From positions 1 through 54,592 of the forward strand of contig RBZT01000398.1 of assembly GCA_003693705.1 (NCBI GenBank): 54,592 bases of DNA, given 5' to 3'. A program made the translations under genes and the position numbers. Below are positions 1 to 4,644 of this stretch, one piece after another (within the stretch, counting starts at the first letter, position 1; every line of letters starts with the position of its first letter). This DNA is from Polymyxa betae A26-41. Lineage: Eukaryota; Protista; Endomyxa: Phytomyxea. The notes beneath the pieces are model-generated. The model searched no databases and was not told the DNA's origin. It saw only the letters and a list, made by a program, of their open reading frames with translations.

Positions 1-181
1 TGGCCTACAGCCACGGTGGATGAAAACTCCGCCGCGGAGTTTACCAAGGTATGAGAGCGCCCTAATAGACTCGAGTATTTAAAGATCAATTTTCACTTCT
101 AATACATCTCATTCTGTTATTGATTGTGTTCGGCTCACATCGTTCTGAATCGTAGCCGCTCACCGAGCGAGAAAACCAACA
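1..181 (+). mobile_element. 3' part of an LTR of the ~330-bp LTR family (runs off window start)
   Basis: Shares 'cattctgttattgattgtgt..gctcacatcgttctgaatcgtagccgct' and the AAACTCCG-N3-CGGAGTTT palindrome with copies at 19518 and 32127; ends ..CCAACA at 181. Confidence 0.85.
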
Positions 182-186
182 TTATA

Positions 187-3100
187 CACTTTAAAAGCTG
201 GAAAATGGCCAATTTTGATCAATTCTATAATTCAAAAATTAATCTAGAATCGCTGAAATTTGCAGTCGCATTCGGAATGACCCAAACCCTAGCCCGCAAA
301 AAGGTTTGCGCGAAATTCGCGCTCTGGACCTCGTCGTCGCTGATTGCGTTTCCTTCCCGATTCAATGGCGTCTCTGGAGGAGTTCTTCGATAATTACGAT
401 GATTCAGCGTCCGATATCTCGGAAGACGATACTGAAGATGAAACCTTACAGTGGAGTTATGTTACAGCTGCTCAAATGGGCGAAGTTTCAGTTGTAACGA
501 CATCGCTGGATGGGATGCTTTATGAAGACGCTGTTCGTGAGATTCGAGCCGTCTGCCGCAATGTGAGGCAGATTCTGACCAAGTCCAGCAACGCTGAGGT
601 TACATTTGATGATATCGTAAACTATTTTCTATCTGCGCTTGCTGGTAACCTGTTTAGTGCTGTTCGAGAAGGTCTACCATCAGGTAACGTTACTAACCCT
701 AAACCCTAAACCCCAAAATAGACCTGTTGCTTTTTAGGGCGCGCTCCAGTAGCAGGAACCGATTTGGCAGCATCTATTAAGGTTATCGGGTATCTCTCGA
801 TATATCGAACAACGCCAACACGTTTCTTTGATCATGCTAAACGTTCTCTGTACCCCATCGCTTCTTCATTTGACCAAGACTCTTTTCTGAAGATTATGAA
901 ATACTTGAACGCTCGCAGAGATTCGGATAATGGCAGTTCGTGGGACTGTCCATTTGCGGTTGGCACAGGAGTTCGGGCAACGGAGCAGGCGGTAACCGTT
1001 GCTTCATGTAGATTGGCTTATATTCGTGGCGTAACGTCTATAGCTCTGGATGACGACCAGTATCGTCTGACTTCTGCTCTGTCGGAGGATATGGGTTTCA
1101 CAAGGGATAACAACCCTAAGAAAGCTCTCGGCGTTGTATCCTCTGTGGTTCTTGGAATGAGACTTCTGGGCAAAGGGAAAGTTGTTCTGACATTGTCAAG
1201 GTTATCCTGATGTGGATGCAATCTGCTGGCCTTCCTGAACACGTTCAAGGGCTTAATGAAACGATTGCTATGGATCGAGGTTACTTACTTCCTGGACTAA
1301 TTGAGTATCTCTGTGAGCGAGGGTTTCACATAATTGACACATTTAAACGCATCAAATCTGCGCCTTTTGCCTTCGGTGGCATTGCTCACAGCAACTGTCG
1401 TCTGGTGATGGACAAAGGTGCTAAAAGCATATATGTTGCTCGAAAGAAGTTTGCTGACAAATGGGTGTATGGTATCGCCTATCGTGGTGGACGGGGAAGA
1501 GTCGCAATGCATTTTTCAACCGCACCAAAGGACTGCCATCTGGGTCCTCAGACCGAAACGTGCTGACACATTCACGGTATCTGAAACAGACCATCTAATG
1601 ATTCAAACCTCGGTTGACAAAAATACTGATTGTATAACACGCAGCCAAGGTGGCGCTGAATGGCATATTTTGCGGGTCGGGTCCATCACCTCAACCGTTG
1701 CTCACGTTGTTCTTTCTAACTGTTATGACCGGTTTGATACCCCCGTCGAGCAGGAGCTGCTATCTATCATTGGAATCACAGGACGGAGAAATCTCCCTGC
1801 TTTCGATCGAGACGATTTAAACCACAGAACTGTGTCAGAGTTACGGATCCTGTGCAACTCTAGGAATCAGAATTCTCGGGGAAACAAGAAGGATCTAATC
1901 GAGCGACTGCTCGAGCCCACGGAAAGCTTACCTCTTAGTAACGTTCGTCTGACTGCAAGTTTGATGGAGAAGTGGTTTATGAAGCCTTTCACCAACTCTT
2001 ATATGAAGTTAGGAAGCGTCAATGAATCGAACATTCGTCGCGCGTTGCCGGCATTCTTTGATGATCATGGCCAAGGATTCCGCATTATGGGAGATATTGT
2101 AGAATTTCTGCGAAAGAGGTCAGTGGACGGCAGTAACGACAATCTGATGGCAACATCTATCGACGGCGTAATGGTTTTGAATCCTCCAAGTTCGGATGGA
2201 TCAGCAACGTTCGTATGTATTCTGGAGCTGAAAACTATGACAGCGCATCAATCTGTTGAAGATGCCCACAGGCGATTAGATGAAGCTTCTATTCTGACCT
2301 CAACTTTGGGACAGCGTCTTTTTGTCACATCATTCGATCATCCTTTGATTCGAAAATTGGTCTTTACTCCGGCCTACAGATCCCAGGTTCTGCATCATTG
2401 TTCTGTCGCTTCTGTTGACCATTGCCTGTATGTTGTAGCGAGCACGAGCAGCGTGATATATTCACTTCTGATCCAGGTATCTCGAGATTGTCGAGCCTTG
2501 TTTTCGTCAATGCTTTTGACCAAATGTGCTGAGCACTCCCAGTACTTTACAGGTTTAGAATCTCCGAATCTAGTTGATCTTCGACCTACTGGATTCGGGC
2601 ATGCTGTGGATTTGCACACTGTTCAAATCTGGAGCAAATTGCAGCAAGCTTTTGAATCCTGCCCGGCAGCGTACGAGCAGCCCGTTGCTTCCAGCTCATG
2701 ATTTCGTGCCATTTGTGGTCGATCATTGGAATCATTTCAAAGGTGGCCAGGATATTGTTTCTAGAATTTTGGCAAATGTCAAAATTGACTTCCGGTCATT
2801 AACCCCTCGGGCGTTCATCTATATCCGGTTCATCATGGTTTCTTTGATGGACTCGCATATGATAAACCGGCTTTTGCAAGTCGAAAGTGAGCTCGCTCAC
2901 TTTTCGACATACAAGCAGTTGAAACAACGCCTGAACCGCTTATCTTCTTTCTCTGATTTCCTGCAGAAGTTCACGGAAACTTGGACTCCTTCGCCGTCAT
3001 TTATCAACTGTATGCAGGACGCTGCTGAGCTGGGAACAGGTGCCTCTGCATTTTAGCGCAAGCTCCTGGAAGAAACGTTTTTGCTTGGCTGAATGGACCA

Positions 3101-3479
3101 GTGGGACGGGTGACTCGTCCTCGCACGGACGTCTACCATGAAATCCAGCATGGCGGAACACGGCGCTGGTGCCCTATATGCAACACTCAAACCACCGCAC
3201 GATGTATCATTTGCGGCGTGACTGCTTGCGTTCAAACTGCAGGACTTTGGACACGATCCTGCATGGATTTAATGCACACTGCTGACGGTTTAGTTCAAAG
3301 GGTCCGTCCGAAGAGAGACCCTCACCAGCGCGGTAGAAGAGGTCGTCGCCGATCGCTTACGCCTCAAAGTGAGCGAACGCGACGGCAGCGAAGCCAGAGT
3401 CCAGAGCAGGACTCCTCTGCTCAAGCACAGCCTCGAACTCGACGTCAGAGAGCTCAATAAACCCTTTTTTCTTATAGTG
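187..3479 (+). mobile_element. piggyBac-like DNA transposon with TATA target duplication
   Basis: TATA(183-186)|CACTTTAAAA...TCTTATAGTG|TATA(3480-3483); short imperfect TIR (8/10); one long transposase gene fills the element. Confidence 0.75.
365..3460 (+). pseudogene. piggyBac-like DDD transposase with internal YqaJ/lambda-exonuclease + SAP domains and C-terminal Cys-rich domain (frameshifted)
   Basis: Acidic N-terminus; GT-AG intron 684-737 joins ORF 344 in frame to ORF 764; IALDDD (D at 1049), IAMDRGY..LCERGFHIIDTFKR (D at 1273), PFVVDHWNHFKGGQD (D at 2751); SQGGAEWHILRVGSITST, MKLGSVNE, TSIDG, LELKT, YRSQVLHH; SAP TVSELRILCNSRNQNSRGNKKDLIERLL; CPIC..RCIICGVTAC..SCMDLMH; frame changes near 1200, 1540, 2680, 3060. 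Confidence 0.8.
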
Positions 3480-3499
3480 TATATTATTCACTATAACGC

Positions 3500-4644
3500 A
3501 TTTCCCCAGTTATTGCGGGGCCGCGCAAACCCTAACCCCTACCCCTCGATTGCGAAGGCTCTGTTTGAGCTACAATAAAATTTTTACATAGACATGTAGA
3601 GTATTGCAAGGGCATCATCAGGATAGTATTGGTTGGGGCTCAGACGCTCCCTCTGAGTTTTAACAGATTGCTAAAAACGAAAAGTGCATAATATGCATTC
3701 CACGGACTGCGGATCAGGGCTATGCAGCCCTCAGGAAGAGTTTTTGCTGGATTCAAAAGTTTGGGCTGTAGCACTCTGCTCATCTCGGCGTCGCTCCAAG
3801 AACCAGGGTAATTATCTTTACCCCAGATCAAGCAGCCATCGAAACCATAACATAAAACACCTGCAACTCAGGTCACATGCAGCCAGCCTATTTACAAAAA
3901 CTGTGACGATAATCTGAAAGATGGTTTGCTACACATACCATTATACATTGCATTTTGTGAGTCAGCGTCGGTTGGCTCTTGGACAGGCAGATTCAGGCCA
4001 TCAGCTACTCCGAAACAACCCTTTACAAGTTGAGATTATTTGTGAGTATTATCATGGATTTTACCTTGATCAGTGGTTCCCTTTCGTGACAGAAATTCGC
4101 CCATGTGCGTTGCTCTTCGAAAGAGGGCCATAAAATTAAAGCCTGATCGATTTCCATCAGTGCAAAGGATAATGAAAATTCCGCATTGGCTAATATTCGA
4201 GAAAATGTCGCTGGTGGAACACCAAATTATTTGCATAGTGAATTACGTCGAATTTCAGCAGTGTTAAAATGTAAAAGGCATCCCAGTTCCGCATGCCGAT
4301 GCATAAATTTAATAGGTCGTCCTCGTTTACCAGGCCCATTTCGAACGACATAATGCTTATCAAAAACGATAAATGATAGTCAAATGAATCATAATGCTTA
4401 TCAAAAACGATAAATGATAGTCAAATGAATCAGGGTCAATCGAGATAAAGTTAATAAAACTTCCACGATCTCGGCTGTGATACAGAGTATACCACGGCGA
4501 ATCAGAGGAGTCAACTATCGCATTCGTTGTAAGATAGTTCCTTTCTCGATCAAGCATTCTCAGCCGCATCAGCCAAAGCAGACGGTGCTGTTGCCTACGT
4601 CGCCAAATACGATGCAATACACCCCACTTCAGTCGTTGTTTCAT
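3500..4644 (-). pseudogene. PIF/Harbinger transposase remnant
   Basis: N-terminal 'NYLTTNAIVDSSDSPWYTLYHSRDRGSFINF' and 'WGKDNYPGSWSDAEMSR' (PGSWxD motif); multiple frameshifts; 3' limit approximate. Confidence 0.75.
4349..4432. repeat. 41-bp perfect tandem duplication inside the transposase remnant
   Basis: cataatgcttatcaaaaacgataaatgatagtcaaatgaat x2. Confidence 0.95.

What the first reader, a model, noticed from the sequence alone, without database searches (positions are those of the whole stretch)
187..3479. TATA-targeting piggyBac-like transposon whose transposase contains a YqaJ/lambda-exonuclease, which itself contains a SAP domain
Seen: one same-strand, spliced, frameshifted gene reads acidic N-terminus, D1 (IALDDD, 1049), D2 (MDRGY, 1273), then YqaJ motif SQGGAEWHILRVGSITST, SAP helix-extension-helix (~1810-1915), MKLGSVNE, SIDG, ELKT, YRSQV, then D3 (WNHFKGGQD, 2751), the piggyBac-like 'FI..MVSLMDSHMI' helix and a C-terminal Cys-rich domain (from 3170). 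Ends are TATA|CACT..AGTG|TATA rather than TTAA|CCC. Known: the piggyBac insertion domain lies between D2 and D3; YqaJ PD-(D/E)xK exonucleases occur in ISL2EU elements, but as a separate ORF. Inference: this is a single-chain transposase-exonuclease, nested three levels deep, that could resect donor or target ends and so imply a non-canonical excision/repair mechanism. The putative nuclease catalytic residues (D, ExK) are all still present. From memory, Repbase lists a TATA-targeting 'piggyBacX' group; whether this architecture is described there needs checking.
Basis: partly seen in the sequence, partly recalled or inferred. Interest (0 to 1): 0.9.

Follow-up and report, generated by a model that had tools for sequence, protein, structure and literature searches.

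The report
piggyBac-like transposase with embedded exonuclease
This is a dead copy of a widespread family of cut-and-paste jumping genes in protists and red algae whose transposase carries a second, conserved DNA-chewing enzyme inside its own catalytic domain, which may let it insert at looser target sites than the piggyBac element used in gene engineering.

Summary
The protein claim holds; the end and target-site claim does not. The window copy is a pseudogene (four frameshifts, left end cut by an LTR element). Intact single-frame homologs exist (856-1391 aa), and family members come from Plasmodiophora, Spongospora, Gracilaria and metagenomes. All 25 representatives spanning D1 to D3 carry a lambda-exonuclease between D2 and D3; 24 also carry SAP inside it. 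An AlphaFold model of an intact homolog matches piggyBac transposase (Z 25.7) and lambda exonuclease (Z 15.4). Both catalytic sets are invariant at 21-35% identity. The nuclease follows the native insertion domain and does not replace it. True ends are CCC...GGG (right end 3719) with 4-bp NTAN duplications: 29 of 31 flanks have central TA, none is TATA. Best mechanism (inferred): piggyBac-type transposition, with the exonuclease trimming 5' ends, either the carried-over 4-nt flap or the donor ends. I found no paper describing this architecture. It may equal Repbase 'piggyBacX', which I could not check. The scan noted it on three other pieces of this genome.

The parts
1..181 (+). End of a different, younger repeat (ends ...CCAACA, LTR-like) inserted into the left subterminal region; the element's true left end lies beyond the contig start
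   Evidence: 31 matches in the genome, the best ones stopping at 181-182, with unrelated flanks; neighbouring ORFs in L052 look gag/integrase-like by eye
182..193 (.).
   Evidence: complete palindrome in other copies and in diverged subfamilies
365..683 (+). Exon 1: acidic, predicted-disordered N-terminus and start of the helical DNA-binding/dimerisation domain
   Evidence: tblastn against P0003; model
684..737 (+). Predicted 54-nt GT-AG intron holding two in-frame stops
   Evidence: same position and phase in L028 (51 nt) and L059 (45 nt); that stretch has pLDDT <50 in P0003; not confirmed by RNA reads
738..1560 (+). Helical domain, RNase H core with D1 (1049) and D2 (1273), native beta-strand insertion domain; 24-nt deletion near 1140, frameshifts near 1175 and 1530
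   Evidence: fold match to 6x67
1620..2660 (+). Lambda-exonuclease-type PD-(D/E)xK domain (W 1661, E 2024, D 2162, E 2225, K 2231, Q 2384); 9-nt deletion near 2105 removes the conserved Gly-Leu
   Evidence: Z 15.9 to lambda exonuclease 3slp, rmsd 3.1 A, 197 aligned; invariant residues
1802..1915 (+). SAP domain inserted inside the exonuclease
   Evidence: Pfam SAP E 9.4e-7; Pfam SAP in 10 of 18 full-length homologs
2700..3030 (+). Return to the transposase: W-N-x-x-K-G-G-x-D3 helix (W 2727, D3 2751) and second half of the helical domain; frameshifts near 2680 and 3040
   Evidence: aligned to T. ni piggyBac P433-D447
3053..3460 (+). C-terminal cysteine-rich domain (from 3170), basic tail, stop at 3458-3460
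   Evidence: profile match to piggyBac and piggyBat CRD
3476..3492 (.). Inner right subterminal palindrome (mistaken for the right end)
3683..3699 (.). Outer right subterminal palindrome
   Evidence: equivalents in L028, L034, L057, L058
3710..3719 (-). True right terminal inverted repeat (CCCTGATCCG on the minus strand)
   Evidence: copies diverge right after it
3720..3723 (+). Right 4-bp target flank, CTAT (fits NTAN)

Best explanation
A decayed copy of an old lineage of piggyBac-related cut-and-paste transposons (CCC..GGG ends, subterminal palindromes, 4-bp NTAN target duplications). Its single-chain transposase carries a conserved lambda-type 5'-to-3' exonuclease, with a SAP DNA-binding module, between the native insertion domain and the D3 helix. 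SHOWN: architecture, folds, conservation of both active sites, ends, target preference, mobilisation of ~950-bp non-autonomous copies. INFERRED from T. ni piggyBac: the DDD core excises by a hairpin and integrates with a 4-bp stagger; the invariant W-N pair (equivalent to Y439/N440, which contact the central T and A of TTAA) would explain why only the central TA is kept. INFERRED, untested: the exonuclease trims 5'-phosphorylated ends held in the transpososome. Most likely (~35%) it removes the 4-nt overhang of the old target site from the transposon ends: piggyBac avoids this step only because old and new sites are both TTAA, whereas with NTAN the overhang usually mismatches the new site. Next (~30%) it resects the donor ends so the empty site is refilled from the sister chromatid.
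For: Intact one-frame homologs. All 25 cluster representatives with both D1-D2 and D3 have the nuclease in between, 24 with SAP. In 18 long homologs at 21-35% identity D258/D259, D341, D833 and nuclease T462, Q465, W470, R474, T479, G584, N587, E588, G616, L617, S635, D637, E658, K660, R709, Q711, H714 are invariant. Model pLDDT 83, pTM 0.76: piggyBac 6x67 Z 25.7, rmsd 3.9 A, 381 aligned; lambda exonuclease Z 15.4, 203 of 228 aligned, model residues 460-795. In the nuclease block dN is 0.32-0.35 with synonymous sites saturated between subfamilies. Transposase and nuclease trees recover the same three groups. Flanks: 29 of 31 have central TA, 2 TTAA, 0 TATA. Six single-locus copies have perfect 4-bp duplications of six different sequences. 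piggyBac mechanism and residue roles from PMC7351741.
Against: No biochemistry. Lambda exonuclease acts as a processive ring-shaped trimer on duplex ends (own knowledge), hard to fit into a transposase dimer, and a 4-nt flap could be removed by host nucleases. Two or three two-ended copies have mismatched flanks (TTAT/TTAG, TTAT/ATAA), which fits occasional flap carry-over but also decay. The model coordinates could not be docked on DNA, so it is not known whether the nuclease site can reach either substrate.
Confidence: 0.6

Rival explanations
1. Donor-end resection: the exonuclease chews the chromosome ends left after excision, blocks seamless religation and forces homologous gap repair from the sister or homolog, so each jump adds a copy.
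For: Lambda-type enzymes make 3' tails for recombination (own knowledge). Seamless repair in piggyBac (PMC7351741) gives no copy gain by itself. The ~950-bp internal-deletion derivatives are the product expected from aborted gap repair.
Against: Internal-deletion derivatives are common in transposons without any exonuclease. Copy numbers here are modest (about 27 DNA matches, 40 protein matches).
Confidence: 0.3
2. The exonuclease replaces the hairpin route: the DDD core nicks the transferred strand and the second nuclease cuts or trims the non-transferred strand, as TnsA does for Tn7.
For: A PD-(D/E)xK nuclease serving second-strand cleavage is established for Tn7 TnsA (own knowledge). The omega-loop aromatic equivalent to Y283 is not clearly kept (by eye).
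Against: The W-N pair equivalent to the hairpin-contacting Y439/N440 is invariant. The fold is closest to processive exonucleases, not to TnsA.
Confidence: 0.12
3. The inserted block is only a DNA-binding or structural module, or serves a role outside transposition.
For: SAP is a DNA-binding domain; no activity was measured.
Against: Metal-binding D/E/K and the 5'-end motif W-x3-R are 97-100% conserved in all homologs that cover them, which argues for catalysis.
Confidence: 0.1
4. One reading: an element bounded by CACT..AGTG with TATA duplications, or such an element nested in a separate CCC..GGG MITE.
For: One coding copy (C754) is bounded on both sides at the inner palindromes, with a near-repeated 9-bp spacer and without outer ends.
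Against: The outer CCC..GGG ends accompany the coding region in three diverged subfamilies of this genome and in L057-L059, and the palindrome sequence changes with the subfamily at all its positions. No flank is TATA.
Confidence: 0.04

Closest known systems
piggyBac superfamily (T. ni piggyBac, PDB 6x67; piggyBat, PDB 9c0f)
   Same: Fold and domain order (acidic N-terminus, helical domain, RNase H core with D-D-D, beta insertion domain, CRD); KGGxD motif; CCC..GGG ends; internal palindromes; 4-bp duplication.
   Different: About 370 extra residues (exonuclease plus SAP) before the D3 helix, so D2-D3 is 492 residues against 101; target NTAN, not TTAA; ~15% structural identity; Pfam DDE_Tnp_1_7 passes its cut-off in only a minority of members.
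Repbase 'piggyBacX' / RepeatMasker class DNA/PiggyBac-X
   Same: The class label is reported for Plasmodiophora brassicae repeats (bioRxiv 10.1101/2025.07.30.667784), a species that holds this family. From memory the group is a divergent piggyBac relative from red algae and protists.
   Different: Unknown: no definition or sequence was reachable.
KolobokE (PMC9587614)
   Same: DDE transposon encoding a PD-(D/E)xK lambda-exonuclease-like nuclease.
   Different: Different superfamily; the nuclease lies downstream of the transposase domain, not inside it; TTAA duplications and RR..YY ends.
ISL2EU (PMC4122938)
   Same: Encodes a YqaJ exonuclease.
   Different: Separate ORF; IS5/Harbinger-related DDE with THAP domain; 2-bp duplication.
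Lambda exonuclease / YqaJ family (3slp, 3syy, mimivirus R354 5yet)
   Same: Fold (Z 15.9, 15.2, 11.3) and catalytic motifs.
   Different: Here embedded in a transposase and interrupted by SAP; one bacterial YqaJ cluster carries a Rho_N helix-extension-helix module in 68% of members, a possible precedent for the pairing.

Membership tests
piggyBac superfamily | RNase H-fold transposase with D-D-D triad and KGGxD motif at D3 | tested here: met
piggyBac superfamily | Helical dimerisation/DNA-binding domain on both sides of the core, and beta insertion domain after strand 5 | tested here: met
   6x67 aligned over model 88-931, chain 117-526, Z 25.7; strands 392-434
piggyBac superfamily | C-terminal cysteine-rich domain | tested here: met
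   profile hits to 9c0f (E 1e-5 for the whole sequence) and 6x67 CRD
piggyBac superfamily | Short TIRs starting C[C/A/T][C/A/T] (PMC5381638) | tested here: met
   CCCTG, CCCC, CCCA, CCCTA ends in all families examined
piggyBac superfamily | TTAA target-site duplication | tested here: not met
   4-bp duplication kept, but 2 of 31 flanks are TTAA; consensus NTAN
piggyBac superfamily | Hairpin excision and seamless donor repair | not testable with these tools
   needs biochemistry; only the Y439/N440-equivalent pair was checked
piggyBacX / PiggyBac-X | Sequence similarity to the Repbase or Dfam entries | not testable with these tools
   no entry or defining paper held
   0 of 31 flanks
Lambda exonuclease / YqaJ | Fold | tested here: met
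   Z 15.9, rmsd 3.1 A, 197 of 226 aligned; top of 48,161 chains
Lambda exonuclease / YqaJ | Motifs W-x3-R, G-x3-E, S-x-D, E-x-K, Q | tested here: met
   invariant in A2; 36-67 sequences per column; mapping to lambda residue numbers is from memory
Lambda exonuclease / YqaJ | Pfam PF09588 at the gathering score | tested here: not met
   best E 0.035-0.078
Lambda exonuclease / YqaJ | 5'-to-3' exonuclease activity, ring oligomer | not testable with these tools
   experiment needed
SAP domain | Pfam PF02037 above cut-off | tested here: met
   28.8 bits against 23.9
KolobokE / ISL2EU | Nuclease downstream of the transposase or in a separate ORF | tested here: not met
   nuclease lies between D2 and D3 in one frame

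The most novel reading that the evidence does not exclude
An undescribed, cross-supergroup lineage of piggyBac relatives in which a second active nuclease is built into the transposase's catalytic domain and performs a required step of transposition (removal of the old target flap or resection of the donor), uncoupling piggyBac chemistry from strict TTAA targeting.
Probability: 0.4. Interest if true: 0.85.

Novelty: new variant of a known kind. Interest (0 to 1): 0.72.

Why it matters
Lambda-type exonucleases turn up in three unrelated transposon groups (ISL2EU, KolobokE and this one); the papers I read give no tested function for them. Here the nuclease sits inside the catalytic domain and intact copies exist, including one 4212-bp element that is 100% identical between contigs with different flanks, so the question can be tested with point mutants. 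The family also separates piggyBac's fold from its TTAA rule, a stated limit of piggyBac as a tool (PMC13461360). A survey of 13,693 piggyBac subfamilies filtered on TTAA-like flanks and reported terminal fusions only; the word exonuclease does not occur in its main text.

Tried and rejected
TATA|CACT ends: rejected. Secondary insertion of the nuclease block: rejected, as it is in frame, conserved, and present in every long homolog. Chance fusion by frameshift reading: rejected by intact one-frame homologs. Nuclease replacing the insertion domain: rejected. Search for a nuclease-less sister lineage with the N-terminal profile: six hits, none over 439 aa, none informative; that tool sees only 0.55-1.75 times the query length, so this is a weak negative. 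Pfam alone barely detects the transposase or YqaJ. Ten paper searches found no description of the architecture; the Repbase review, Li 2013 and Yuan and Wessler 2011 were not held.

Full report
OBSERVATION. Pfam finds SAP clearly (E 9e-7) but YqaJ and the transposase only faintly. The element is multi-copy in its genome (27.09 Mb, 1001 contigs): 27 DNA matches, among them a 90% copy on C754, a 63% full-length copy on C669 and seven short derivatives. The nuclease block has 40 protein-level matches.

ENDS AND TARGET. Aligned flanks of ten copies stay shared for another 240 bases beyond 3479 and diverge right after CGGATCAGGG at 3719. Non-autonomous copies of 941-996 bp start with CCCTGATCCG (or a decayed form) and carry 4-bp duplications TAAT, TTAG, ATAG and ATAA; one has TTAT/TTAG and one has a decayed left end. 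The same outer ends accompany the coding region in the diverged subfamilies on C669 and C866 and in metagenomic loci L057-L059. Distant members have CCC..GGG ends with CTAA/CTAA (L069) and GTAC/GTAC (L071, Gracilaria) duplications. Over 31 flanks, 29 have central TA, two are TTAA and none is TATA; TA makes up 5% of dinucleotides in the window. In piggyBac a palindromic internal repeat is bound by the cysteine-rich domain dimer (PMC7351741); the same role here is an inference. The window copy has lost its left end: bases 1-181 are the end of a younger repeat, LTR-like, inserted into the inner left palindrome. One copy (C754) is bounded at the inner palindromes on both sides; I read it as a truncation but cannot fully explain it.

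PROTEIN. A search of 1.84 billion proteins with an unbroken 335-aa frame from the C669 copy gave 268 hits, including an intact 1074-aa protein, P0003, at 66% identity. Against P0003 the window copy shows four frameshifts, a 24-nt deletion near 1140 and a 9-nt deletion that removes a conserved Gly-Leu of the nuclease: it is a pseudogene. Among the hits, all 25 cluster representatives that span D1-D2 and D3 carry the nuclease in between, and 24 carry SAP within it (the profiles were built from family members, and Pfam independently finds SAP in 10 of 18). In 18 long members at 21-35% identity the DDD triad and 17 nuclease positions are invariant. Named sources are Plasmodiophora brassicae (CEP03823, CEP03616), Spongospora subterranea and the red alga Gracilaria domingensis (KAI0559177); the rest are unnamed metagenomes and runs.

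FOLD. The family profile's best transposase matches in the PDB are T. ni piggyBac (E 2e-6) and piggyBat (E 1e-5). The AlphaFold model of P0003 (pLDDT 83, pTM 0.76) matches piggyBac at Z 25.7 (381 residues, rmsd 3.9 A), Tn5 at Z 16 and lambda exonuclease at Z 15.4 over residues 460-795. The insert folded alone ranks lambda exonuclease first among 48,161 chains (Z 15.9). The native beta-strand insertion domain is kept (residues about 371-435); the nuclease follows it and the chain returns at P819, equivalent to piggyBac P433, before W825-N826 and D833, equivalent to Y439-N440 and D447. Trees of the transposase part and the nuclease part recover the same three groups, though deep branches are weak, consistent with one old acquisition. 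Between subfamilies, synonymous sites are saturated while dN in the nuclease is 0.32-0.35, against 0.17-0.22 in the DDD core.

MECHANISM. Shown: ends, target preference, mobilisation of short derivatives, conservation of two active sites. One related 4212-bp element with an intact gene is 100% identical between contigs with different flanks, which suggests recent activity; in short-read metagenomes the left and right flanks may come from different insertions. Inferred: piggyBac excises through a hairpin, leaving a 4-nt overhang of the old target on each transposon end; Y439, N440 and a pocket for T-3 contact the central bases (PMC7351741). Keeping the W-N pair fits retention of the central TA while the outer bases vary. 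With a variable target the old overhang will usually mismatch the new site and must be removed, yet six of nine two-ended single-locus copies show perfect duplications. A built-in 5'-to-3' exonuclease is a natural candidate for that step (about 35%). Resection of the donor ends to force gap repair is nearly as likely (30%); a TnsA-like second-strand role (12%) or a non-catalytic role (10%) less so. None is tested, and host nucleases could do the trimming.

COMPARISON AND NOVELTY. It works like a piggyBac and meets the structural and terminal criteria, but fails the TTAA criterion, so I file it as piggyBac-related and not as a canonical member. Lambda-type nucleases are known in ISL2EU as a separate ORF (PMC4122938) and in KolobokE downstream of the transposase domain (PMC9587614). 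Ten searches of the held literature found none inside a DDE catalytic domain. The class label DNA/PiggyBac-X is applied to P. brassicae repeats, so this lineage may well be Repbase's piggyBacX (my estimate about 55%); whether that entry describes the nuclease is unknown to me. The scan's first readers noted the same architecture on three other pieces of this genome; those are unchecked notes, not support.

LIMITS. 

VERDICT. A real, conserved and unusual architecture, with corrected ends and target. New variant of a known kind; interest 0.72.

Noticed in passing
L030:5479-5992 (C754 copy): A ~510-bp element with 19-bp perfect inverted ends and an 8-bp duplication (TTACTGAT) is inserted just before the start codon; hAT-like MITE by these features. 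A similar sequence interrupts the C823 copy.
   Followed up: partly
L070:1699-6318: Two-ended element whose flanks are TTAT (left) and ATAA (right): they differ only at positions 1 and 4, as expected if an old target overhang was carried over on one side.
   Followed up: partly
L030 (C754), both ends of the coding copy: This copy stops at the inner palindromes on both sides, with a near-repeated 9-bp spacer and no outer ends; unexplained (truncation, or rare use of the palindromes as ends).
   Followed up: partly
window 281-295, 692-712, 3529-3545: AAACCCTA(A/G) telomere-box-like motifs occur in the 5' region, inside the intron and in the right subterminal region, and are kept in other subfamilies.
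   Followed up: no
L064-L068: A 4212-bp family member with an intact 1130-aa gene in five metagenome samples, 100% identical in the pairs compared, with different flanks: a candidate active element.
   Followed up: partly
G000 C607:4214-5308 and C476:10903-12006: Diverged family members (38% and 33%) with long stop-free frames (698 and 532 aa); possibly less decayed; not fetched.
   Followed up: no
L057:3667-3670 and L058:5936-5965: Related genes are interrupted at other positions by short intron-like segments, so intron positions vary within the family.
   Followed up: no
ESM Atlas, row 2: A bacterial YqaJ cluster in which 68% of members also carry Rho_N, a SAP-like helix-extension-helix module; the nuclease and SAP may have been acquired together.
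   Followed up: no
window 4349-4430: Perfect 41-bp tandem duplication outside the element.
   Followed up: no
L028:7600-8400: A second, more diverged fragment of the same family in opposite orientation about 1.5 kb from the C669 copy.
   Followed up: no
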